This document shows, one piece after another, positions 988 through 56,770 of a stretch of DNA of 64,000 nt. This stretch comes from Octopus sinensis. Lineage: Eukaryota. The translations under genes were made by a program, and so were the position numbers. The notes below the pieces were generated by a model that saw only the letters and a list, made by a program, of their open reading frames with translations, did no database searches and had not been told where the DNA came from. The stretch spans positions 115,630,001-115,694,000 of the forward strand of contig NC_043000.1 in assembly GCF_006345805.1 (NCBI RefSeq). The letters are read 5' to 3'. The number at the start of each line of letters is the position of its first letter. The stretch's first letter is position 1.

Positions 988-1929
988 CTAGAGAATAAAG
1001 GTCAGCCTTTCTTCATAAGACAAATTCTTGAGACCAAGGACCATGCAGGTAGCCAGCTTCTGAACTCTTTCGAGATGCTGTATGTCTTTGAGGAGATAAG
1101 GAGAAGAGGCTTGAATCCCGTACTCCAATATGGGTCTCACCAGCGTGACATAGGGCGGTAGGAATATGGCTGCTGTGAGCATTCCGAATGACCGTCGAAT
1201 CAAGAACAGAACTCCGCGTGCTTTGTTGGCAGCATGGACGCACTGGGCCGAAGGCGAAAAGGAGGAATCCACCAGGATACCCAGGTCCTTTACCTGATCG
1301 GTCCTCTCCAGCAGCAGACGACCCGGCTCGAAATCAAGTTGAGTTGCAGGAGGAGAGCCAACAGGCAGATGACAGCACTTTGACACGGTCAGACACAGGT
1401 CCCATTCGTTAGACCATCTCCAAATTTGGTGGAGGCATCGACGAAGATCCTCTATATCACCGCGAGGAGCGACCAGTTTGACATCGTCGACAAATAGAAG
1501 GGTGTGTTGCGTGAGGTCGTCGGGCAAGTCATTTATGAAGACTAAGAACAATAAGGGCCCAAGCACTGAACCTTGGGGCACGCCACTGCTTGCACTGGAG
1601 ACGTCGGACCGCGAACCATTAACTTGGACTTGGAAGGAGCGATCTGAGAGGAAGGCACCAACCCATCGTAAAATATCCGGATGGAAACTATATGCTTGAA
1701 GCTTGACAAGTAATAGGCGGTGGTTTACCGAGTCAAAAGCTTTGGCAAAGTCCAATAAAACGATGTCAACAGCATCACTATCATCGAGGATGCGCGTCAC
1801 CAATTCTTCCATTACCAGTAAGTTGGTCAAGCATGATCTCTTCGGCACGAAGCCGTGTTGGGAATCAGAGATAGAGGCTGTGTTTTGGAGGTGGAGCATC
1901 ATACTTTTCTTAAGGATGGTTTCGAACAT
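988..1929 (-). pseudogene. Reverse transcriptase domain fragment of the CR1 ORF2
   Basis: 313-aa open stretch with all core RT motifs. YADD-equivalent reads FVDD. The frame is broken upstream by a 16-bp tandem duplication at 1958-1989 and downstream at about 990. Confidence 0.9.
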
Positions 1930-2830
1930 CTTGCTGATTATTGATGTAAGGGAAACCGGTCGGTAGTTAAGCGGGTCGGTAGTTAAGCGGGTCTTCGCGG
2001 CTCCCTTTCTTGAAAATTGGGCAGATTATCGCTGTTCTCCAGTCTGCAGGTATAACACCCGTCGCCAATGACATATTGAATAGACGTGTTAAGGGCTCGC
2101 AGATGACCGGAGCCAACGCTTTGATAACCCGTGGGTGTATGCCGTCAGGGCAGTGACCCTTGTTGACATCGAGGCCTTGAATAACGCGTTCGACTTCGTC
2201 CCGCGTGATGACCAATCGAAGCATTGGAGGTACCGATCTATCAAAGGAGGGGGTTCATGACCATCATCTTGTTTGAAAATAGTTGAAAAAGCCTCGGCAA
2301 ATAATTGACTCTGTTGATAAGGGTCCTCAATCGATACGCCTGTTGAGTCTACGAACGTTGCAATTTGGTTGTTCAAGCGGGAATTCCGTTGGACATGGGC
2401 AAAGAAGGTTTTTGGATTGCTACTGGCGTTTGCCGCGATTTTGTATTCATATCTGAAGCGTTCTTCCTTTTCAGTTTTCACGGCTCGGTCTCGTTGAGTT
2501 TTGTACACCTCAAAAGCTGCAGTCGAATCCAGATTTTTGAATTCAGCCCAAGCAATATCTCTGAGTCGAAGTTCTCGTTTAACCTTCTTCGTCACCCAGG
2601 GCTTGTGTTTCTTCTTCTTGGGAAGCCCAAACGGGAAACTTGGTCAGTCAACCAGATTACATATGCTTTGAGGGATGACCATAGTTCGTCAACTGAGGAC
2701 AACGTCATCAGGGATCGCCAGTCCAGAAGCGCGGAAGCCTCGGTTAGAATTTCAAGATTAATTGCAGAGAAGACTCTACGTGGCAGCGAAGTAGTTGTGG
2801 GCGTAGAAAAAGTTGTGTGCATGACGAACT

Positions 2831-3554
2831 TCAGGACCGCATGATCACTCTTGGCAAGAGGGACACACACAGATACGTCTGACACTGATCTTGGATAGCG
2901 GGAGAATACCAGATCCAGCATAGATGGCTGCTGCCCAGACCGATGCCTTGTCGGATATTCAACATGTTGCGATTGAAACAATCTTCAGCCACGTCAAGAA
3001 GGGCCTGGCCGAACCGGGAAGATGATGTACAAATTGATACGGGCCAATCGATCGTGGGAGCGTTGAAGTCTCCTAATATCAAACAGTCATGAGAAGCTGA
3101 CACGAATCTTATCGCTTCGAGTAAATGAGCATCGTCCTGGGGGTCGGCAAGAGGCAGCCTGTAGACAGCTAACACGGGCAGGCAAAACCCGGATAGGCTC
3201 AGCTTGAAATAGACGGCATCGACTTTTGTTGCAGGTTGAGCATTAGTGGGTAGAATACACAGCAACACCTCCACCTCGCTTTTTTTCTCTGTCACATCTG
3301 AAGAGGGCGTAGCCCTTTAGGTGGATTTCTGAGTCCTTTACTTCTGGAGTCAGCCAAGTCTCGGTGATAGATATCACATCAGGGGAATCACGCATTGCCA
3401 GTGTAAATAGTTCGCTGAACTTTGGAAATAAGGAGCACGAGTTGGTATAGACGATGCTGAGCTGTGAAGTTTGAGGGGCGGGAATTGGGGAACAAGCAGA
3501 ATAATGGGTATCAGGGATAGCATCGTTGACGGGGGTATCTACTGTTCTAAACAC
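2831..3554 (-). pseudogene. APE (AP-endonuclease) domain fragments of the CR1 ORF2
   Basis: ORFs 3243-3554 and 2831-3295: YTNSCSL, PDVISITETWL, RCDR..RGGGVAVY, VYR.P, ILGDFNAP.IDW. Confidence 0.88.
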
Positions 3555-6475: not shown

Positions 6476-7461
6476 TCAGTCTGGGGAGTTAGGTGGTCAC
6501 ATATTAGGGGTAATGTGATTGCAGAAATTGTCTGACAGCCATGACTGGGTTCTCATGCTTGTGTGGCATGGTGCAGAATCCTGTTGCCAGACATAGGGTC
6601 TTCCATCAACCACCCTCTTGACCCAGGGCAGCACTACCTCCTCCAGGCACTTGATGTAGGCTTCCATGTTGAGTCTGAGGCTGTGTGGGAAGATGAATGG
6701 AGGCATAGCGTCACCATCACTAGTGATCACTCCAAACACCATGATATTAACTGGATGTTTGATTTTTATCACACTCGGTACATGTTTTGGGGACAGGGCA
6801 AGCCAACGGTTGTTCTGTGTGTTCTCCATCTGATCCTGACAGAAATTTTTCTTGTCTGAGAAAAACCAAAATATGTTCGGTTGGAGGGGATGCTTGAGTT
6901 TGTTCAGAAGCTTCGTAGTGCGGTCTTTTCTCTTGTCCTTGACGGCTTTGGATAAAAATTGGCCCTTTCTCATCTTGTATGAGGAATATCAAATGTCTTC
7001 ATGCACTACCTGCCTGATAAGAAACTCAGACACTCCCATGTCCCTGGCGATGGACCTGATTGACTTGGAGGGATCGTTGTCATTCATGGCCTGGATCTCA
7101 CCAAAAAATTCTGGAGTTTTTTTCCTATCAGAACGATCAAAGTGAGTTTTCCGAGCTACCGTACCTTTGTAATAACCATCAGACTCATCCAACTCTTTCC
7201 GAATCCTCTGCACTGTTCTCAAATTGCAACTCAAACACTCTGAAATGTTCGTATTGGAGCTTCCGGTTCGAATGCCAAGCAGTACAGCATGTCGTTTCCA
7301 AATTTCTGGCAGAGCGAATTGCGTCATGGTGCTGTTTTTCTCACAGACGGTGCCCAACTGACCCTACTATACTTTGTTGTCGACAAAATCAAACACAAAC
7401 AATGCGTATGCGCGATATTAAAAATATAAAATATCGACGGTTTACCCGTTTTCGCACCTGG
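6476..7461 (-). mobile_element. Tc1/mariner-superfamily transposon (likely maT/DD37D-type), frameshifted and 3'-truncated
   Basis: HTH ORF 6989-7357 and DDD ORF 6497-6973 (FFSD, IMVFGVITSDG, WQQDSAPCH, then NM*PPNSPD from WPPNSPD). One TIR-like end adjacent to TA at 7462-7463. The third catalytic D is missing, so family spacing cannot be counted. Confidence 0.88.
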
Positions 7462-9641: not shown

Positions 9642-9675
<34 letters not shown>

Positions 9676-10199
9676 ATGTATGTGTGTGCGTGTGTGAGTG
9701 TGTGTGTAAGTCTCATTTACTTAAGTAGGCACGTACAATGAAACTGTCCAATTGCATAGATTAGGAATACGGATAGAACAGATTTGGTAAAAGAAAACTG
9801 TAGGACTGAATTATATACGTCTATCAATGAAGTAGGCGTGACATACGTCATATGGTGAACCAAGAGATCTTTTTTAAAAAGTGAATACACACCTTTGTGA
9901 GATTAACCAATCGGTATCCAATATATATATAATATATATATATGTGTGTGTGTATGTATGTGTGTGCGTGTGTGAGTGTGTGGTAAGTCTCATTTACTTA
10001 AGTAGGCACGTAACATGAAACTGTCCAATTGCATAGATTAGGAATACGGATAGAAACAGATTTGGTAAAAGAAAACTGTAGGACTGAATTATATACGTCT
10101 ATCAATGAAGTAGGCGTGAACATACGTCATATGGTGAACCAAGAGATCTTTTTTAAAAAGTGAATTACACCCTTTGTGAGATTAACCAATCGGTATCCA
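9378..10199. repeat. Tandem triplication of a ~280-bp unit
   Basis: Unit (TA/GT microsatellite + gtaagtctcatttacttaagtaggcacg...ccaatcggtatccaa) occurs three times and is nearly identical apart from single-base indels. Confidence 0.92.
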
Positions 10200-11197: not shown

Positions 11198-12379
11198 ACA
11201 TGGCTGTAGGACCGGAGCCGTGACCTCTCAATACGGAAAAGACAGTCTCCTTCATCTCCGAGCTAGGGAATTATTTTACACTGATCTATAATCCTGCGGG
11301 GATTAGCTTTTCTTTCCATCCTTCCGGGGGTTCCTAAAACAAACCCTTGTGTCCTGGGATTGCTTTAACCCATTAATTCCTTCTTCTAAACATTTCCGGC
11401 GTTGAATCTATGTTAGAAAGTCTTATGATTTACAGACACATTGCTTTCAAATTTTGACACAAGACCAGCAATTTCGAGGTTGGAGTAATTCGGTTACATG
11501 AACCCAGTAATAAACTGGTACTTATTTGATCGATACCGAAAAGATGAAAGGCAAGATCGACCTCGGCAGAATTTGAACTCACAACGTAAAAACGGACGAA
11601 ATGTCGCTAAGTATTTTGCCCGGTGCGCTAACGATTCCGCCAGCTTACCGCCTGATGTATTACACTGATATCACCGTGATTACCGTGACTGACCAGGCTA
11701 TCGAATATTGCTACACATCGCTGGTCACAATGCGCTTCGCATTGTTTTAGCCTTCAAATGACGCCACCCCTCTGACTAAGCGAGCAGGCCAATAGAAGAA
11801 AGATTGAGAGAAAGATGTGGCGAAGGGGTACAGTAGGGATCGCCACTATCCCCTCCCGGAGCCTCGTGGAGCTTTGGGTGTTTTCGCTCAATAAACACTC
11901 ACAACGCCCGGTCTGGGAATCGAAACCGCGATCCTACAACCGCGAGTCCGCTGCCCTAATCACTGGGCCATTGCGCCTCCACATTACACTAATATATCAT
12001 AACTCATGTTTATATCTTGTTTGTTACAGTCACAACATTTCGGTCGTTGTATTCTTCTACCGTCTTCAGGTATCTGTCATATTCGATCAGGATCCAGGAA
12101 TTTCTTACCGAATTCTTAACTAAATCCACGGATATAGATTGCTATTGTTTCGTTGTCCACATCAGGAATATTTGGTTATAATTTATCCAACATACAAACC
12201 CCAAACTCTCATCAGTGTCTCGTGCAATTAGGGTGTTGGGCTCGCGATCATAAGACCATGATTCTGAGATCTGGACTTTATGCCGCCCACAAGCGGGTCA
12301 CTTTATGTCACGTTGCCACAATCCACTCAATTGGCAAAAACGAGTAGTATCTGTTTTTCAAAGGGCCAGTTTTGTCACA

Positions 12380-13017
12380 TTCTTATTTCTTTACTGCCCA
12401 CAAGGGGCTACACACAGAGGGGGCAAACAAGGACAGACAAAGGGATTAAGTCGATTATATCGACCCCAGTGCGTAACTGGTACTTATTTGATCGACCCCG
12501 AAAGGATGAAAGGCAAAGTCGACCTCGGCGGAATTTGAACTCAGAACGTAACGGCAGACGAAATACGGCTAAACATTTCGCCCGGAGTGTTAACGTTTCT
12601 TATTTCTTTATTGCCCACAAGGGGCTAAACATAGAGGGGACAAACAAGGACAGACAAACGGATTAAGTAGATTACATCGACCCCAGTGCGCAACTGGTAC
12701 TTAATCTATCGATCTCGAAAGGATGAAAGGCAAAGTCAACCTCGGCGGAATTTGAACTCAGAACGTAAAGACAGACGAAATACCTATTTCTTTACTACCC
12801 ACAAGGGGCTAAACACAGAGAGAACAAACAAGGACAGACAAACGAATTAAGTCAATTACATCGACCTCAGTGCGTAACTGGTACTTATTTAATCGACCCC
12901 GAAAGGATGAAAGGCAAAGTCGACCTCGGCGGAATTTGAAAACAGAACGTAGCGGCAGACGAAATACCGCTAAGCACTTCGCCCGGCCTGCAAACGTTTC
13001 TGCCAGCTCGCCGCCTT
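12380..13017 (-). mobile_element. SINE family A head-to-tail trimer
   Basis: Three consecutive bodies; junctions taacgtttct|tatttc (about 12600) and gaaatacc|tatttc (about 12786). Confidence 0.85.
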
Positions 13018-13553
13018 TTGTCACATTCTGTCACGTCTGATTTCCCTGAATGCTTCGTTTAAGGTGCGCATATGTGTGGAGTGCTCAGCCACTTACATAT
13101 TAATTTCACGAACAGTCAGTTTCGATGATCGAATCAACTCGAATACGCATCGTCGTAAGCGATGGAGAGCCTGTCTTCTCTCCCATCGACTGTCACATTC
13201 TCGATGTCCCTTTGAGTTGATGATAGGAGCACCCAGAGATTTTCCAAATTCACGACTATAACGGCACCCAAAATAATTATCGAAACGCATGACACCAACT
13301 GAAACTTGTTTGCGAGGGGCGGCTCTGGTCTAAGGTTTGAATTTTCGATGTCTGTTGCTCGCTCCTCTTGAACAAGAGTACGTATGTGTTTGAGCAGGTG
13401 TGGCTGTGTGGTTAAGAAGCTTGCTTTGTTAATATGTAATTTCGGGTTCAGTCCCACTGTGCGGTATTTTCGGTATGCGTTTTTTTTTTCTTACCATAGC
13501 TTCGAGTCGACCAATGCTGTGTGAGTGAATTTGGTAGACAGAAAGGAAGTCCG

Positions 13554-13620
<67 letters not shown>

Positions 13621-14138
13621 CGCGTGTGTATTGCGTGGTAAGAAGCTTGCTTCCCAACCACACGGTTCCGGGTTCAGTCTCGAACTGACCAAAGTCTTGT
13701 GAGTGGATTTGGAAAACGGAAACTGAAACGTAGCCAGCCCATCATACCCCCCCCCACACACACACACCCATCACGTGATCACACGTCATGTGACCGACCA
13801 TGCTATCAAATGTTGTTACACATCGCTTGTCACAATGCGTTTTCGATTTGTTGTAGCCATCAAACGACGCCACCCCGCTGGCTAGGCGAGCAGGCCAACA
13901 TTCCCCCGCTGATCGAAAGTGGATCCGGAACAACGTGAAATGAAGTGTTTTGCTCAAGAACACAACTCGTCGCCCAATCAGGGAATCGAACCCACGATCT
14001 AGCAATCGTGAGTGCGAGTGCCTAACCACTAGGGCAGCGTATTTCACACTTCTTTGTCGCGATTAAGTTTATTTATCTCGCGACCCATTGAAGGGTCGGG
14101 ACCCATAGATCGAAAAACGCTACACTAGGCTACGCGCC

Positions 14139-26852: not shown

Positions 26853-28944
26853 TATATATATAGTAGTTGGGCAAAAGAGACCGATAGAATAAGTACCAGA
26901 CTTGAAAAATAAGCGCCAGGGTTGATTACTCGACTGAAACGCTTTAAGACGGTGCCCCAGTATGACCGTAACCCAGTGACTGAAACAAGATAAAGATTTA
27001 TCATGGAAGTTTCCATGAGAGGGTTTTAGAAATGTGTATGTAAGGAATTTGGGAGTTTGGATAATTTAGTTTAGAATTTTGAGATATATGGAAGAAGAAA
27101 ATTAATGGCAGGGGTACGACATTTCCGTTTTACTTTAAACCAGAAGCAATTACACAGGAGAACCAACCTCAACACAATGCATAAACTGCATTGCCTGGAA
27201 CTGCCAACATCATACCGAACTGCCAACATCATACCGAACTGCCAATATTCTATGAAATTGCCAAATGTCTTCAGGAACTGCCAATATTCTTGGCAAGAAT
27301 TATTTCGCTTTTGCCAAAGTTAAAGCCTATATTCTATATCTTAAACATAGCCGTCACTTACGAGTGAGTATAACTTATTTGCTAACAGGTTCTACGCTTT
27401 TCGCTGACCATTTTCGGTGCCTACTTTTCAGTGGGTCTCTCTTGGTTCTCTCGTCTTTGACCTGGCAAAATATCCAGGATGTGACAGCAGCTAGAAGGAG
27501 AGAGGGTCACATTATCAGTAGGGTAGTTCTCATTACCGCTGAATAGACGGGTGCAAAGTGAAGTCAAATGTATTGCTCAAGAATACAACGCGTCATAAAA
27601 TCCAAGAATCGAACTCACAGTATCAGGATCGTATGGCCAACACCCTATCCACGAAGCCAAACACTTTACAACGAATAATTAAGCGAATTAAGTCGGTGAG
27701 CCGGCAGAATCATTAGCACATTGGACAAAATACTTAAAGGAATTTCTGCCGACTTTACATTCTGAGTTCAAATCCCGCCGGGGTCGACTTTGTATTTTAT
27801 CCTTTCTGTGTCGATAAAACAAGTACCAGTTGAGTACAGGCAACAATGTAATCGACTTAACCCTGTCCACGAAATCGACTGAATAAACCCCAGTACACAC
27901 CTGGTACTTAGTTTATCAAATCTACAACCCTGTGGCATGTACAAATTAGCGCTAATAATGGTTTCAATTTTGCCAAAAGGGCAGCAATTTTAAGGGAGGT
28001 TATAAGTCAATTGCATCGACCCTAATGTTTCATTGGTCCTTAATTTATCGATCCCGAAAGGATGAAAGGCAAAGTCAACCTCGGCGGAATTTGAACTCAG
28101 AACGTAACTGCAGACGAAATACCGCTAAGCATTTCCTCCGGCGTGCTAACATTTCTGCCAGCTCGCCGCCTTAACTTGGCTACCGATAATAATGTTCTTT
28201 TGGTATTCGTCACACAGTCGAAGATATAATCGACTTAATCCGTTTGTCTGTCCTTGTTTGTCCTCTCTGTGTTTAGCCCCTTGTGGGTAGTAAAGAAATA
28301 GGTATTTCGTCTGCCGCTACGTTCTGAGTTGAAATTCCGCCAAGGTCGACTTTGCCTTTTATCCTTTCGTGCTCGATAAACTAAGTACCAGTTGCGTACT
28401 GGGATCGATGTGATCGACTCATCCACTCCCCCCGAATAGTTGCCCTTGTGGCAAAAATGTGAAATAATTATCATTAGCAAAGTGAATTCAGTACTATTTC
28501 GAAATCAAAGTCTGGAAGAGAATTAAAGACATCTTTTGTTTTATTGTTTTCGATATTAAATTCGTAAGTAATCGCCAGTTTGTGTTGAGCTCAAGAAACT
28601 TTAATTATACTTTCCTACATTAAGGAGTGTAATCTTATTCTTTTATCTTGCTTCTTTGTTTCCGGTGAGTTTTTTTATCTCTTAATGCTGTTGTGTTGTT
28701 GTTATTGTTCTTTTGTGTTTATGTGTGAAGTCGACTTTCGCCGGCATTGCTGTGCGGTTAAGAAGTTCGCTTTGTAACTGCGTGGTTTTGGGTTCAGTTC
28801 CATTGCGTTGCGTCTTCGGAGGGTATCTTCTGCTATAGCCCAACACCGACCAGTGCCTTGTATACACACACACACATAGGTACATACATATATTCATTTA
28901 TACATACATACATATATATATATATTTATAATATATATATATAA

Positions 28945-30715: not shown

Positions 30716-30915
30716 TTTGTTTGCCTGTGTTTGTCCCCCACCATCACTTGATAACTGATGTTGGTGTGTTTACGTACCCGTACCTTAGCGGTTCGGCAAA
30801 AGAGACCGATAGAATAAGTACTAGGCTTACAAAGAATAAGTCCTGGGGTAGATTTCTTCAACTAAAGGCGGTGCTCCAGCATGGCTGCAGTCAAATGACT
30901 GAAACAAATAAAAGA
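30447..30915 (+). mobile_element. SINE family B, full length
   Basis: Complete body immediately upstream of the mariner MITE. Confidence 0.87.
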
Positions 30916-30944
30916 ATACATACAAGCGTACACACACACACACA

Positions 30945-31343
30945 CGAGGGGGCGCTGAAAAGTTCCTGGCTTTAAGGATGTCTATTGCGAAAAACCTAGT
31001 TGGAGGCCCAAACTTACGGGTTTTTTTCGGGGCTTAGAAAAACTGAAAGACTGCTGCAATAAGTATGAGCCGCTACACACGATTTTGTTGTCGATGATGA
31101 CAAATTTGTGGTGCATGAGGTATTGGGTTTTATCAGTTCTGACAATTATACCTTGACTACGAAGTTTCCATATCCACGAGTTATTCACATCTTCATACTC
31201 TCCATCAGTAATGAGCCTGATTGCGACTCCCATCGCGTTGAGTTTGATGAGGATTTGAGAGGAGGATATGTGTAATAAAATGATAATTAACTGATCCTCC
31301 TATATTTTCTTTTACCCAAAGCCAGGAACTTTTCAGCACCCGG
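30945..31343 (+). mobile_element. Mariner-derived MITE (internal deletion derivative) carrying a foreign insert
   Basis: TIRs cgagggggcgctgaaaagttcctggcttt (30945-30973) and aaagccaggaacttttcagcaccc (31318-31341). The transposase C-terminal remnant FFRGLEKLKDCCNK (31022-31063) resumes as DLRGGYV* (from 31252) after the insert. Confidence 0.88.
31063..31254 (-). pseudogene. PLD6: Captured fragment of a PLD6/Zucchini (mitochondrial cardiolipin hydrolase, MitoPLD)-type coding sequence
   Basis: Stop-free ILIKLNAMGVAIRLITDGEYEDVNNSWIWKLRSQGIIVRTDKTQYLMHHKFVIIDNKIVCSGSY aligns with PLD6 GVRVRVVTD...GIQVR.D...MHHKFAIVD..L.TGS. It has HxK(x)4D(x)6GS but is cut before the final N, and has no matching splice sites. 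Confidence 0.9.
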
Positions 31344-31377
31344 TAGCGCGGGCGTGTATATATATATATATATTATA

Positions 31378-31459
<82 letters not shown>

Positions 31460-31652
31460 TATATATATATAAACTACAAAATCTTGAGAAGATTAATCAG
31501 CCTAAATTGCGAGGATGATCCGGTTCTTGACTGAGGATAGAAAGCTTCGAATGACTCATCCTTGTTTTTTTGTATCGTCCATCTGGATGTTTTGTTGTTC
31601 CCTTTTTGTATCACTTAGTTGTTCGGATGTTTTGCGTTCTTATCACATTTTG

Positions 31653-31915: not shown

Positions 31916-33989
31916 GGTTGGACAAAATAATGGAAACATAAATTTCAAACAAATTTATATATATTTATCTTTCTGGCTTGTGTAGAATATGTAACAGAGA
32001 TCTCAGGTCATTCTTCATCGCTTACACATCATCATGATCATGATCATCATCATCGTCGTCGTCATCAACAACCCTTGGACGTTGCTATTTCGAGTCCCAC
32101 GATTCATAGGTCGCGTCACCTAGTTCCCATGAGGGTATTAACGACCGAGATCATGACACTTCCCGTGGATGGGACGCCAGTCCTTCGCAGGTTTACTCAT
32201 TTAAAGCTGAAAGGATTATATCTTTTCATGATATCGAATGCAGATCGATATAAGTAAAGTCAACCTTCTAGAACAGTCGCATGCGGCCCTCAAACATCCT
32301 TCCGGCGGTCTTCGACAGTCTTCCCTCCATAGATATAATAAATTTTTCTTTAATTGACTTGTATTTTACTTATTTTCGTGCGCACCCCCCTCCCCCTAAA
32401 AAAACCCAGGTTTTGGATCTGGCGCAGAAATTCAAAAAAGTTGGGAAACTATGCTTCGGGATCTGAACTCAGAACTTGACGGAACTAGGGGCTAAACATA
32501 GAGGGGACAAACAAGAACAGACATAGGTATTAAGTCGATTACATCGACCCCAGTACGTAACTGGTATTTAATTTATCGACCCCGAAAGGATGAAAGGCAA
32601 AGTCAATCTCGGCGGAATTTGAACTCACAACGTAACGGCAGACGAAATACCTCTAAGCATTTCGCCCGGGGTGCTAACGTTTCTGCCAGCTCACCGCCTT
32701 TAAATTTCTTTACTACCCACAAGGGGCTAAATAAAGAGAGGACCAACAAGGACAGACAAACGGATTAAGTCGATTATATCGACCCCAGTGCGTAACTAGT
32801 ACTTATTTAATCGACCCCGAATGGATGAAAGGCAAATTTGAACTCAGAACGTAACGGCAGATGAACTACCTCTAAGCATTTCGCCCGGCGTGCTAACGTT
32901 TCTGCCAGCTCGCCGCCTTAACGGAACTAAATATCTACTTATAAAATAGTTATAAAACAAATAAATAATTAATTAAAATTTATAATTTATGTTGCTAATG
33001 ATTGATGACAGCGATGCACACTCACGTTTAACTATATTTTTGTTAATGTCTTTATATTCTTATTTCTCGTCTGATCGAACAGACAGTGTTAATTCACATA
33101 TATAGTGTCATCACGGTATTTCTATTTAATTAAATAAAATATTCAATAAGTTATCCATAATATCAAGTCACTTAGTGTATATTTATTTTATTTTATTTAA
33201 ACATACACACGCATCTATCCACACATCCACGTACCCAAACTCTCTCTCTCTCTCTCTCTCACACACACATACACACTTATGTATAAAGTTATTAAAAAAT
33301 TACGCATTCTCTTTGTAAGTTACTAAGTTAAGGTAAACCGCTATAAACTAGTCCAATGTACAGCACAGCATGAAAATCACGACTATGCGGATAACAATAA
33401 TACAAATGAGTAAGCATAAGAGACATGAGTTAATTCACGAAAAACAAAAGAGCAAAAAACAAAAACATAACAGAACAGAAAACAAACAAATAACAGATGT
33501 AAAGCAATAAACAAAAAAAAAAAGCATCTAAACGTTTAAATTATGATAACTATAAATGAAAAAAAGGAAATGAAGCTAATATTAATTACTTTAAGAGATT
33601 TTGATATTGGAGAGCAAGAAAAACTCCGCACGAAGCGTTTCTATCTCTGTTAAGGAAATACCTTCGAGAATGGTTTACCAGCTACTCTTTCACTCTTTTA
33701 CTCTTTTTACTTGTTTCAGTCATTTGACAGTGGTCATGCTGGAGCACCGCCTTCAGTCGCGCAAATCGACCCCCAGGACTTATTCTTTGTAAGCCTAGTA
33801 CTTATTCTATCGGTGACTTTTGCCGAACCGCTAAGTTACGGGTACGTAAACACACCAGCATCAGTTGTCAAGCGATGTTGGGGGGACAAACACAGACGCC
33901 CAAACATATACACACATATATACATACATACATGCATACATACATACATACATACATACATACATACATACATACATACATACATACAC

Positions 33990-51903: not shown

Positions 51904-52631
51904 TCCTATTTTTTAAAATTTTCTGATGTAGTGTCACACGCTATGCTAACGATTGTGGCAGCTCACCGCCTTGTAATATTGGTTTCAAATTTTGGCACGA
52001 GGCCAGCACGTCCAGGGGTGGGGAAAATCGATTACATCGACCCCAGTACTCAGCTGGCACTTACTTTATCGACACCAGCAGAATTTGAACTCAGAAAGTA
52101 GCGACTGACGAAATGTTGCCAGTTACTTTGTTCGGTGTGCTAACGTTTCTTATTTCTTTATTGCCTACAGGGGGCTAAACACAGAGAGGACAAACAAGGA
52201 CAGACAAAGGGATTAAGTCGATTATATCAACCCCAGTGCGCAACTGGTACTTAATTTATCGGCCCCAAAAGGATGAAAAGCAAAGTCGATCTCGGCTGAA
52301 TTTGAACTCAGAACGTAGCGACGGGCGAAATATCGCGAAGCATTTCGCCCAGCGAGCTAACGATTTTGCCAGCTCGCCGCCATTGTTATTTTAATAACAT
52401 TCAATTGCTCTGTGGTATGTAATGTATGTGTAAATGTGTGTGGGCGCGTATGATGTTTGTCTCTACAATGTGTGTCAGTGTATTTGTATGTTTTCACACA
52501 ATCAAATTCACACACACAACATACCACAGAGCAACGTGGTTTCAAAGATGACATGACAGAACAACTTAATCAAGTGAGAGTAAAAAGACACAACTGTTAA
52601 TATACGTAATTTTGAAGATTTGATTCCAGTT

Positions 52632-56027: not shown

Positions 56028-56770
56028 CACATATTATAGAAACAAACATTCCGCAAGCAGACACATACACACACACACACGCACACACGTTTGATCCACT
56101 TAATAGCGTATATCTGTTTGTTTATTACCCTCAAGGGGCTAAACACAGAGGGGACAAACAAGGACAAACAAACGGATTAAGTCGATTACATCGACCCCAG
56201 TGCGTAATTGGTACTTAATTTATCGACTCCGAAAGGATGAAAGGCAAAGTCGACCTCGGCGGAATTTGAACTCAGAACGTAACGGCAGACGAAATACGGC
56301 TACGCATTTCGCCCGGCGTGCTAACGGTTCTGCCAGCTCGCCGCCTTACAATGGCGTACATCAGTGTCGTGCCGTGGATATTTGTGCAAGGAAGGATGTC
56401 GCGAGGGCAAACAAACTCAGGAACTGTTCCGGTGGCACGCTCTGCAGCCACGCTACTGGTTAAAAATAACGATCTTATTCTTGTGTTTGAATCCACTCAC
56501 CGATGTTCCTTTTGATTTTTTTCAGTTTCCGTTCGTTGTCGATTCGTTAAATCTGGTTATTATTGTCCAAAATTGTCTAGAAACCCTTTACGTGCATGCA
56601 GGCATATATACATGACTGTACGCGCGCGCGCGTGTGTGTGTGCGAGCGTGCTGCGTGTGTGTGTGTATGTATGTGTGCGTATGTGTCTGTACGTATAGAC
56701 AAGTGAATTCACACACACACACACACTCACGCACACTCCCGCACACACATACATAAACTCACATACACAC

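What the first reader, a model, noticed from the sequence alone, without database searches (positions are those of the whole stretch)
30945..31343. Mariner MITE that has captured the catalytic core of the piRNA nuclease Zucchini/PLD6
Seen: two mariner TIRs enclose a transposase C-terminal remnant (FFRGLEKLKDCCNK ... DLRGGYV*) that is split by about 190 bp of foreign sequence. On the opposite strand that sequence is a stop-free PLD6-like peptide with HxK(x)4D(x)6GS, truncated one codon before the motif Asn. There is no polyA, no TSD and no fitting splice site; junction bases are shared (agt/gta on the left, gat on the right). Established: PLD6/Zucchini is the endonuclease of primary piRNA biogenesis and acts as a homodimer, and gap-repair capture produces Pack-type TIR elements. 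Inference: this is a Pack-mariner carrying a piece of the host TE-silencing gene antisense to its own orientation. If it is transcribed or sits in piRNA-producing chromatin, it could make small RNAs against zucchini mRNA (a TE counter-defence or feedback loop) or a catalytically dead fragment. It could equally be a one-off repair insertion.
Basis: partly seen in the sequence, partly recalled or inferred. Interest (0 to 1): 0.9.

Follow-up and report, generated by a model that had tools for sequence, protein, structure and literature searches.

The report
Spliced PLD6 cDNA patch inside MITE
A 190-base piece of spliced messenger RNA from an octopus PLD6/Zucchini-like gene was reverse-transcribed and pasted once, apparently during repair of a DNA break, into an old, decayed mariner-type miniature transposon; it is a neat natural example of a known repair accident, with no sign that it moves or does anything.

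Summary
At 30945-31343, two mariner-type inverted repeats enclose a 190-bp stretch (31065-31254). On the minus strand this encodes 63 residues of a PLD6/MitoPLD-like protein, including HxK(x)4D(x)6GS.

The Pack-mariner interpretation does not hold:
- **Spliced template.** The insert matches two exons of the single close PLD6 gene (G000 C2:198.36 Mb), which lie 3.87 kb apart. It carries their exact junction (CAAG|GTATAATT), with a canonical GT-AG intron removed, so the template was spliced RNA or cDNA, not genomic DNA.
- **Single copy.** Nothing else in the 2.72-Gb genome matches the insert or its junctions.
- **Junction signature.** There is no poly(A) and no target-site duplication. The junctions show 3-bp and 2-bp microhomology and about 3 bp of MITE lost. 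This is the signature of a class 2 templated insertion (RT-product-mediated break repair).
- **Old host element.** The MITE arms are about 10% from their family consensus, whereas the insert carries only 3 changes of its own (1.6%).

Four of the seven differences from the parent are ancestral states shared with O. vulgaris or O. bimaculoides. This dates the capture to after the O. bimaculoides split and before the split from O. vulgaris.

All seven differences are synonymous. Only three lie on the insert's own branch, so this is a weak hint of constraint at most.

Verdict: an ordinary, probably inert repair insertion and a new member of a known kind.

The parts
30945..31064 (+). Left arm of a mariner-type MITE. 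It comprises the 5' TIR (core 30954-30973), an untranslated part, and the start of the transposase C-terminal remnant (FFRGLEKLKDCCNK, 31023-31064).
   Evidence: It aligns to positions 1-~118 of the 212-bp family consensus. Empty copies have this arm directly joined to the right arm. There were at least 2742 first-look candidates in the genome.
31065..31254 (-). 190-bp fragment of spliced PLD6 mRNA, with the sense strand on the minus strand. It encodes codons 105-167 of the 230-codon parental gene (ILIKLNAMGV...HHKFVIIDNKIVCSGS). The microhomologies are ATG (31065-31067) and AT (31253-31254).
   Evidence: It is 95-96% identical to two places on G000 C2 that lie 3.9 kb apart. It hits PLDc_2 and MitoPLD. 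It differs from the parent at 7 nucleotides, all synonymous.
31065..31151 (-). Part of the insert derived from PLD6 exon 2. It begins with the first base of the exon (GTATAATTGTC...) and is cut inside the exon after GS.
   Evidence: It matches C2:198358793-198358880. The parental exon is preceded by ttttattccAG.
31152..31254 (-). Part of the insert derived from the 3' end of PLD6 exon 1 (...CTTCGTAGTCAAG). The exon-exon junction lies between 31152 and 31151.
   Evidence: It matches C2:198362765-198362867. The parental exon is followed by GTAAGCGAAT. The window reads CTTCGTAGTCAAG|GTATAATTGTC on the minus strand.
31255..31343 (+). Right arm of the MITE. It comprises the end of the transposase remnant (LRGGYV*, stop at 31273-31275), a 3' untranslated part and the 3' TIR (core 31318-31337). 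TA follows at 31344-31345.
   Evidence: It aligns at 91-93% to the 3' half of other copies. The terminal bases are degenerate compared with the consensus ...CACCCCCTCG|TA.
30982..31299 (-). 105-codon stop-free frame that runs through the PLD6 fragment into both MITE arms. The first ATG gives a possible 83-aa peptide.
   Evidence: The open stretch in the left arm is already open in the family consensus (read by hand from the consensus), so it is not evidence of selection. No such protein is on record.
30930..30945 (.). (AC)n microsatellite abutting the left end of the MITE.
31357..31471 (.). (TA)n microsatellite 12 bp beyond the right end of the MITE. Runs like this can form cruciforms and are a plausible source of breaks. 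That link is inference, not a result.

Best explanation
In the germ line of an ancestor of this octopus, a double-strand break arose inside an already old, immobile copy of a mariner-type MITE. The timing is after the split from O. bimaculoides and before the split from O. vulgaris. The assembly is probably O. sinensis.

The break was patched with a reverse-transcribed fragment of spliced PLD6 mRNA. The fragment is truncated at both ends. It was joined by microhomology-mediated end joining (ATG on one side, AT on the other), with loss of about 3 bp of MITE sequence.

This is a class 2 templated sequence insertion, also called RT-product-mediated DSB repair. It is not a transposon gene capture.

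The patch has since sat as a single-copy, most likely non-functional insertion. Its being PLD6 probably reflects availability of that mRNA in germ cells.

Shown: the spliced template, single copy, junction anatomy and relative ages. Inferred: the break, the source of reverse transcriptase (LINEs are abundant), germ-line expression of the parent, and lack of function.
For: (1) Two-exon origin. The insert matches two separate exons of the one close PLD6 gene: C2:198358793-198358887 and C2:198362762-198362867.

(2) Exact spliced junction. The parental exon 1 ends CAAG|GTAAGC and exon 2 starts ttattccAG|GTATAATT. The window's minus strand reads CAAGGTATAATT, which is the spliced junction exactly.

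(3) The intron is old. The same intron is present in O. vulgaris and O. bimaculoides, so the intron predates the capture.

(4) No intermediate copy. No intron-less PLD6 copy exists elsewhere in the genome: all 19 candidates were scored and only the gene, this fragment and a 44%-identical paralogue came up.

(5) Single copy. The insert with its junctions has only 3 matches, namely itself and the two exons.

(6) Junction anatomy. Empty copies read AATAAGT(A/G)TG TGAAT (C/T)TGAGAGG. The window reads AATAAGTATG-AGCC...GAGGAT-TTGAGAGG. There is no poly(A), no TSD, microhomology of 3 bp and 2 bp, and a microdeletion.

(7) These are the published features of class 2 TSIs and RMDR, including spliced-mRNA fragments without poly(A) and 1-5 bp microhomologies (PMC4516963; PMC5110952).

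(8) Relative ages. The MITE arms are 20/203 = 9.9% from the family consensus, as for other copies. The insert carries 3 own-branch changes in 189 bp.

(9) Dating. Four of the 7 differences from the parent are ancestral states retained in the insert. Codons 144 and 148 match O. vulgaris and O. bimaculoides; codons 119 and 128 match O. bimaculoides. This dates the event and also rules out an assembly artefact.

(10) A source of reverse transcriptase is at hand. A LINE RT ORF lies in the same window (PF00078, E 6e-31).
Against: - All 7 differences from the parent, including the 3 on the insert's own branch, are synonymous third-position changes, and 63/63 residues are identical. For 3 of 3 the chance is about 0.008 with equal site rates. 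It is about 0.08 if third positions mutate three times faster, as the comparison of dS (0.135) with non-coding divergence (0.044) suggests. This is a weak hint of constraint, or of a source allele that already carried those variants.
- The pre-insertion sequence of this particular MITE copy is inferred from other copies, so the exact microhomology and deletion lengths are estimates.
- The break itself, and who supplied the reverse transcriptase, are not observable.
- Expression and small RNAs could not be examined.
Confidence: 0.75

Rival explanations
1. Pack-mariner. The MITE acquired host DNA by gap-repair or neighbouring-insertion capture, and is or was a mobile vehicle carrying a PLD6 piece.
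For: TIRs and a TA on the right flank are present, and the element is non-autonomous and carries a gene fragment. Low-copy mariner Pack-TYPE elements have been reported in plants (PMC8903248).
Against: - The fragment lacks the 3.87-kb intron exactly at the splice sites, so genomic DNA was not the template.
- The composite is single-copy.
- The terminal bases of the right TIR are degenerate, and the left flank is CA rather than TA.
- The arms are about 10% from consensus, against 1.6% own change in the insert.
Confidence: 0.03
2. The patch was made while the MITE family was still active. Transposase-induced breakage or aborted gap repair of this copy created the break, and PLD6 cDNA served as filler. 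On this view the event is linked to transposition, though still RNA-templated.
For: Internal deletions and fillers in mariner-type elements are classically made during gap repair (general knowledge). The insertion lies in the interior of the element, near where the transposase gene was deleted.
Against: - The arms' divergence (9.9%) is about six times the insert's own-branch divergence (1.6%).
- The empty-site sequence is conserved across many copies. The deletion that made the MITE therefore predates family amplification and is unrelated to this insertion.
- The nearby (TA)n run offers an alternative source of breaks.
Confidence: 0.08
3. The fragment has been co-opted. It might be a source of antisense piRNAs or siRNAs against PLD6 mRNA (a feedback loop or TE counter-defence), or a coding exon or peptide kept by purifying selection.
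For: - 63/63 amino acids are conserved, with 3 own-branch changes all synonymous.
- A 105-codon open frame exists.
- The insert is 96% identical and antisense relative to the MITE's own orientation.
- There is a precedent: AT-chX repeats derived from vasa make piRNAs against vasa in Drosophila (PMC6486647).
Against: - Three changes are too few for a conclusion (p about 0.01-0.08).
- Selection for RNA complementarity would not favour third-codon positions.
- The peptide lacks the motif Asn, the C-terminal third and the N-terminal anchor, so it is unlikely to fold.
- The openness of the frame in the left arm is inherited from the MITE consensus.
- No such protein is annotated or on record.
- Only the TIRs, not the PLD6 part, form a duplex in a fold.
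- No host exon or uniform TE orientation is apparent in the window.
Confidence: 0.07
4. Assembly artefact: a cDNA or chimeric read was incorporated into the genome assembly.
For: An intron-less fragment in a repeat-rich region of a long-read assembly could in principle be a chimera.
Against: The fragment differs from the same individual's gene at 7 sites, and 4 of these are ancestral states seen in other species. The junctions fall inside one MITE, with microhomology and continuity on both sides.
Confidence: 0.01

Closest known systems
[quoted passage not shown] Sources: Onozawa & Aplan 2016, PMC5110952; Ono et al. 2015, PMC4516963.
   Same: In both, a short fragment templated from a distant transcribed locus is inserted. 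It can span spliced exons, is truncated at both ends, and has no poly(A) and no TSD. Junctions show microhomology and a microdeletion. The event is heritable, so it occurred in the germ line or early embryo.
   Different: This is a fixed, old natural example in a cephalopod, dated by ancestral states to before a species split. The recipient is a MITE and the donor is a PLD6/Zucchini-like gene. The break and the reverse transcriptase are inferred, not induced or observed as in the experiments.
Pack-TYPE transposons (Pack-MULE, Pack-CACTA, mariner Pack-TYPE of plants). Source: Gisby & Catoni 2022, PMC8903248.
   Same: Both are non-autonomous TIR elements with a host gene fragment between the TIRs.
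   Different: Here the fragment is intron-less (RNA-derived), the composite is single-copy, the TIR ends are decayed, and the capture is much younger than the element. There is no evidence that the element ever moved with its cargo.
LINE-mediated processed pseudogenes, retrocopies and class 1 TSIs.
   Same: Both are reverse-transcribed from a spliced mRNA.
   Different: This insert has no poly(A) tail, no target-site duplication and no 3' end of the mRNA. It is only 190 bp from the middle of the coding sequence.
Gene-fragment-derived piRNA loci such as AT-chX (vasa-derived) in Drosophila melanogaster (Kotov et al. 2019, PMC6486647), and pseudogene-derived piRNAs in mammals (the mammalian case is from my own knowledge).
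   Same: In both, a piece of a piRNA-pathway gene lies outside its gene in repeat-rich DNA and could in principle yield antisense small RNAs against the parent.
   Different: AT-chX is amplified and is shown to make piRNAs. Here there is a single copy and no expression or small-RNA evidence.

Membership tests
Class 2 templated sequence insertion / RT-product-mediated DSB repair | The insert is templated from a distant locus of the same genome. | tested here: met
   It is 95-96% identical to C2:198358793-198358887 and C2:198362762-198362867, while the window lies on C4.
Class 2 templated sequence insertion / RT-product-mediated DSB repair | There is evidence of reverse transcription, i.e. an intron is missing at exact splice sites. 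| tested here: met
   The CAAG|GTATAATT junction is present. The parental intron of 3.87 kb has GTAAGC...CCAG ends and is also present in O. vulgaris and O. bimaculoides.
Class 2 templated sequence insertion / RT-product-mediated DSB repair | There is no poly(A) tract, no target-site duplication, and truncation at both ends. | tested here: met
   The insert covers codons 105-167 of 230. The flanks read ...AATAAGT[ATG] and [AT]TTGAGAGG..., with no A/T run and no repeat of the target.
Class 2 templated sequence insertion / RT-product-mediated DSB repair | There is microhomology and/or a microdeletion at the junctions. | tested here: met
   ATG (3 bp) and AT (2 bp; 5 of 7 if mismatches are allowed) are shared between the MITE and the donor. 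About 3 bp (TGA) of the MITE are missing. The pre-insertion sequence is inferred from 12 other copies.
Pack-TYPE (Pack-mariner) transposon | A non-autonomous element with TIRs and TSD that carries host gene sequence. | tested here: met
   The TSD is intact (TA/TA) in most family members. In this copy it is CA on the left and TA on the right.
Pack-TYPE (Pack-mariner) transposon | The cargo was acquired from chromosomal DNA (gap repair or mobilisation of neighbouring insertions). | tested here: not met
   The cargo spans a spliced exon-exon junction, and no intron-less genomic donor exists.
Pack-TYPE (Pack-mariner) transposon | The element was mobilised with its cargo, i.e. there is more than one copy at independent sites. 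| tested here: not met
   Only one place in 2.72 Gb matches the junctions.
Tc1/mariner-derived MITE | Terminal inverted repeats and a TA target-site duplication. | tested here: met
   The TIRs are about 30 bp, (TA)CGAGGGGGTGCTGAAAAGTTCCTGGCTTT. Most aligned copies are flanked by TA on both sides. The resemblance to Hsmar1/MADE1-type TIRs is from memory only.
Tc1/mariner-derived MITE | The internal sequence derives from a mariner transposase gene, and an autonomous partner with the same ends exists. | tested here: inconclusive
   The consensus encodes GLEKLKDRCNKCVNLRGEYVE*. This resembles the C-terminus of a full mariner ORF in this genome (...YGIKKFVNRWKKVIDN...). However, 24 aa gave no PDB hit. 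None of the 30 fetched PF01359 loci carries this TIR.
LINE-mediated processed pseudogene (class 1) | A poly(A) tail, a TSD of at least 5 bp, and the 3' end of the mRNA. | tested here: not met
   None of the three is present.
PLD6 / MitoPLD / Zucchini family (parental gene) | A single HKD motif of the PLD superfamily, with best similarity to MitoPLD/Zuc. | tested here: met
   The full parental protein scores E 1.2e-32 against mouse MitoPLD 4ggj over residues 36-206 and E 5e-15 against fly Zuc 4gel. It hits Pfam PLDc_2. Orthologues are named mitochondrial cardiolipin hydrolase.
PLD6 / MitoPLD / Zucchini family (parental gene) | The gene acts as the piRNA-biogenesis endonuclease in this animal. 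| not testable with these tools
   A second PLD6-like gene lies 130 kb away (44-47% identity). It scores about equally to mouse and fly proteins. Which one, or both, serves piRNA biogenesis is unknown.

The most novel reading that the evidence does not exclude
The patch may not be inert. Having kept all 63 codons intact since before the O. sinensis/O. vulgaris split, it could be maintained in one of two ways. It could be an antisense source of piRNAs that tune PLD6 mRNA, an autoregulatory loop of the piRNA pathway analogous to vasa/AT-chX. Or it could be a translated, catalytically incomplete Zuc fragment.
Probability: 0.06. Interest if true: 0.7.

Novelty: new member of a known kind. Interest (0 to 1): 0.3.

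Why it matters
It is a clean, datable natural example of a spliced-mRNA fragment used as a patch in break repair. It comes from a cephalopod germ line, outside mammals and yeast, where the process has been documented. It shows that a host gene piece inside a TIR element need not be a Pack-type capture; the exon-junction test separates the two.

The donor being a piRNA-pathway gene is most simply explained by germ-line abundance of its mRNA (inference). It would matter more only if small-RNA or comparative data showed use or constraint.

The seven diagnostic variants make the fragment distinguishable from its parent in any RNA or small-RNA data set.

Tried and rejected
(1) Autonomous partner. 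I looked for a mariner with the same TIRs. PF01359 gives at least 24,790 candidates, but none of the 30 best loci contains GCTGAAAAGTTCC or AAAGTTCCTGG. The mariner label therefore rests on TIR and TA, plus a 21-codon C-terminal remnant.

(2) Remnant peptide. A PDB search with the 24-aa remnant found nothing.

(3) Other species. I searched 5.8 billion proteins and the gene-position index for the chimeric ORF. Only the truncated O. vulgaris PLD6 model came back, and the 83-aa ORF is not on record. I could not reach the orthologous site in O. vulgaris or O. bimaculoides with these tools.

(4) Host gene. I looked for host exons or a host gene in the 64-kb window. Only LINE, Tc1/mariner-like, SINE and microsatellite-derived frames turned up.

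(5) Selection.
- My first estimate treated all 7 differences as informative and gave p of about 1e-3 against neutrality.
- I withdrew it after polarising with O. vulgaris and O. bimaculoides.
- Four differences belong to the parental lineage, where synonymous change is expected, which leaves 3 of 3 on the insert branch.
- The insert's total of 3 changes also fits the local non-coding divergence: about 3-4.4% between G000 and O. vulgaris, so about 2% per lineage.

(6) Paralogue as donor. Rejected, because it is only 44-47% identical.

(7) Later intron gain. Rejected, because the intron is shared by three species and the paralogue.

(8) Species identity. A literature search did not retrieve the assembly paper. 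'O. sinensis' rests on my recollection of assembly statistics, plus 98-99% protein identity to O. vulgaris.

Full report
**1. The observation**

Window 30945-31343 begins with CGAGGGGGCGCTGAAAAGTTCCTGGCTTT and ends with AAAGCCAGGAACTTTTCAGCACCCGG. The cores (30954-30973 and 31318-31337) are perfectly complementary.

The + strand reads FFRGLEKLKDCCNK before, and DLRGGYV* after, a stretch that does not belong to the element. The minus strand carries a 105-codon stop-free frame (30982-31299). Its middle hits Pfam PLDc_2 (E 1e-10, 42 bits against a 27-bit cut-off) and mouse MitoPLD 4ggj (E 1e-10). It contains HHKFVIIDNKIVCSGS.

**2. The element**

A search of the window's own genome (G000: 2.72 Gb, 13,516 contigs; the window is C4:115630001-115694000) gave at least 2742 first-look candidates. 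Query positions 1-123 and 309-397 match many places where the two halves lie directly next to each other.

Aligning 12 such copies gives a 212-bp consensus flanked by TA in most copies, with TIRs of about 30 bp. It also has a continuous remnant frame ...GLEKLKDRCNKCVNLRGEYVE*. That frame resembles the C-terminus of a complete mariner ORF from the same genome (...YGIKKFVNRWKKVIDN...).

The genome is full of mariner transposase genes: at least 24,790 candidates for PF01359. I did not find the autonomous partner with these exact ends. 'Mariner-type MITE' is therefore well supported by TIR and TA, and only suggestively by the remnant.

**3. The foreign 190 bp comes from spliced RNA**

In the same search the insert matched two places on contig C2, on the same strand and 3.9 kb apart. 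C2:198358793-198358887 matches at 95% and C2:198362762-198362867 at 96%. A query limited to the insert plus both junctions has exactly three matches in the genome: itself and these two.

Reading the C2 locus shows a two-exon gene on the minus strand. Exon 1 ends ...CTTCGTAGTCAAG followed by GTAAGCGAAT. Exon 2 is preceded by ...TTTTATTCCAG and begins GTATAATTGTC. The window's minus strand reads CTTCGTAGTCAAGGTATAATTGTC, which is the exact spliced junction with a canonical GT-AG intron of 3.87 kb removed.

Other points follow:
- Both outer ends of the insert fall inside exons. The parent continues F-N-W after GS, and ...CHDLIDI precedes ILIKL.
- The gene encodes a 230-residue protein with an N-terminal hydrophobic segment. 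It aligns to mouse MitoPLD over residues 36-206 (E 1.2e-32) and to fly Zucchini (E 5e-15).
- Its orthologues in O. bimaculoides (90% identity), Argonauta and other molluscs are named mitochondrial cardiolipin hydrolase.
- The same intron is present in O. vulgaris and O. bimaculoides and, by exon structure, in a distant tandem paralogue. The intron is therefore older than the capture.
- No intron-less PLD6 copy exists elsewhere: all 19 candidates were scored.

The template was therefore spliced mRNA or its cDNA.

**4. The junctions**

Empty copies read ...GCAATAAGT(A/G)TG TGAAT (C/T)TGAGAGG.... The window reads ...GCAATAAGTATG-AGCCGC...GATGAGGAT-TTGAGAGG.... The donor reads ...TTGAATGAGCCGC... 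and ...GATGAGGATGTCG....

Three bases (ATG) on one side and two (AT; 5 of 7 if mismatches are allowed) on the other are shared between recipient and donor. About 3 bp of the MITE are lost. There is no poly(A), no target duplication and no untemplated filler.

These are the published features of class 2 templated sequence insertions and of RT-product-mediated DSB repair. In that work, fragments of spliced mRNAs lacking poly(A) were captured at breaks with 1-5 bp microhomologies (PMC5110952; PMC4516963). A LINE reverse-transcriptase ORF lies in this very window (PF00078, E 6e-31), so reverse transcriptase is plausibly available. Long (TA)n and (AC)n runs flank the MITE. Whether they caused the break is speculation.

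**5. Ages**

The MITE arms of this copy differ from the family consensus at 20 of 203 aligned positions (9.9%), as for other copies (7-20%).

The insert differs from the parental exons at 7 of 189 coding positions. Polarising with O. vulgaris (locus L043) and O. bimaculoides (L044) gives:
- At codons 144 and 148 the insert has the state of both other species, and G000's gene is derived.
- At codons 119 and 128 the insert has the O. bimaculoides state, while G000 and O. vulgaris share a derived state.
- At codons 116, 132 and 147 the insert alone is derived.
- The insert shares 13 of the 15 differences that separate G000 and O. vulgaris from O. bimaculoides, including four amino-acid states.
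- One CpG site (codon 165) is homoplastic.

The capture therefore happened after the O. bimaculoides split and before the G000/O. vulgaris split, barring lineage sorting.

Non-coding DNA around PLD6 differs by about 4.4% between G000 and O. vulgaris (288 of 6481 aligned positions, very uneven, typical windows 2.5-3.5%). That is about 2% per lineage, which predicts roughly 3-4 neutral changes in 189 bp. Three are seen.

The patch is thus several-fold younger than the MITE it sits in, which argues against capture during the element's active life. The retained ancestral states also exclude an assembly or cDNA-contamination artefact.

**6. Is it under selection?**

All seven differences are synonymous third-position changes, and 63/63 residues are identical. 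I first took this as strong evidence against neutral decay. After polarisation, four of the seven belong to the parental lineage, where only synonymous changes are expected.

The three on the insert's branch are all synonymous. With equal site rates the chance is 0.2 cubed, about 0.008. Synonymous sites of this gene diverge about three times faster than nearby non-coding DNA (dS 0.135 against 0.044). With that weighting the chance is about 0.08. Alternatively, the three variants may already have been in the source allele.

This is a hint, not evidence. Other considerations point the same way:
- The open frame in the left arm is already open in the family consensus.
- No protein like the chimeric ORF is on record.
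- The fragment lacks the motif Asn, the C-terminal third and the membrane anchor.
- In an RNA fold only the TIRs pair (20-23 bp), and the PLD6 part is not double-stranded.

**7. Context**

The 64-kb window holds LINE, Tc1/mariner-like, SINE and microsatellite sequence in both orientations. It has no recognisable host exon. Whether it is a piRNA source could not be tested.

The genome has two PLD6-like genes 130 kb apart. They score about equally to mouse and fly proteins, so 'the' Zucchini of octopus is not yet identified.

**8. Verdict**

The best explanation is a one-off, germ-line, RNA-templated repair patch (class 2 templated insertion) in an old MITE, single-copy and probably inert. It is a new member of a known kind and of modest interest.

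The most novel reading not excluded, a selected antisense or coding role, has a low probability. It is directly testable with the seven diagnostic variants and with the orthologous sites in O. vulgaris and O. bimaculoides.

Noticed in passing
G000 C2:198495447-198504577 (+) (loci L037, L038): A second PLD6-like gene lies about 130 kb from the parental gene. It is 44-47% identical, has the same two-exon structure and an intact HKD motif (HHKFTVIDRKIVIHGSFNW). It scores about as well against mouse MitoPLD and fly Zucchini as the parent does. Which paralogue serves piRNA biogenesis is open.
   Followed up: partly
L043 (O. vulgaris OX597815.1, GCA_951406725.2), 9669-10083 and 13365-13651: The annotated O. 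vulgaris protein is a 119-aa model starting at an internal Met (MGVAIRL...). The genomic sequence upstream nevertheless encodes the full N-terminal part in frame (ATGACAACGTTCGTG...). The public gene model looks truncated.
   Followed up: partly
PLD6 locus, G000 C2:198352000-198371999 versus L043: Divergence between G000 and O. vulgaris is very uneven. It is 0.4-0.7% in two intronic blocks, 8-13% in a SINE-containing block and next to exon 2, and about 4.4% overall. Synonymous sites of PLD6 differ by dS 0.135 with dN 0.006. I have no explanation; possibilities are CpG-rich SINE decay, conversion among SINEs, or old haplotypes.
   Followed up: partly
L031:7359-7648 (G000 C2:198359358-198359647), inside the PLD6 intron: A 290-bp intronic block is conserved: 2/290 differences to O. 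vulgaris and 17/289 to O. bimaculoides. Synonymous sites between the same species differ by dS 0.47, and the neighbouring intron is unalignable. It may be a conserved non-coding element.
   Followed up: partly
PLD6 flanks and intron: alignments A5 columns 850-1040, A6 columns 2640-3065, A7 columns 1060-1275: There are presence/absence differences of SINE-like and other repeat insertions between G000 and O. vulgaris within a few kb of PLD6, several of them embedded in (TA)n runs. This indicates recent repeat turnover in this species group.
   Followed up: no
window 991-3554 (-): A non-LTR retrotransposon has long open frames: RVT_1 at E 6e-31 over a 345-codon frame, and endonuclease-like frames upstream. 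I did not check whether it is intact or young.
   Followed up: partly
window 6500-7363 (-): Two adjacent open frames look like a Tc1/mariner-type transposase. One has an HTH_23 match and the other a DDE-like part with no Pfam hit. It is a different family from the MITE studied here.
   Followed up: partly
whole window, e.g. 12268-12663, 28238-28504, 32502-32765, 52179-52391, 56143-56460: Many copies, in both orientations, of one SINE-like repeat occur across the window. Its translation repeats the string ...RNWYLIYRPRKDERQSRPRRNLNSERNGRRNT... . One copy lies immediately left of the MITE (30720-30925). The window is essentially all repeats and microsatellites.
   Followed up: no
G000 genome-wide: There are at least 24,790 first-look candidates for the mariner transposase domain PF01359, many with long open frames (up to 359 codons, for example C15:31479087). 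Mariner elements are extremely abundant in this genome and possibly recently active.
   Followed up: no
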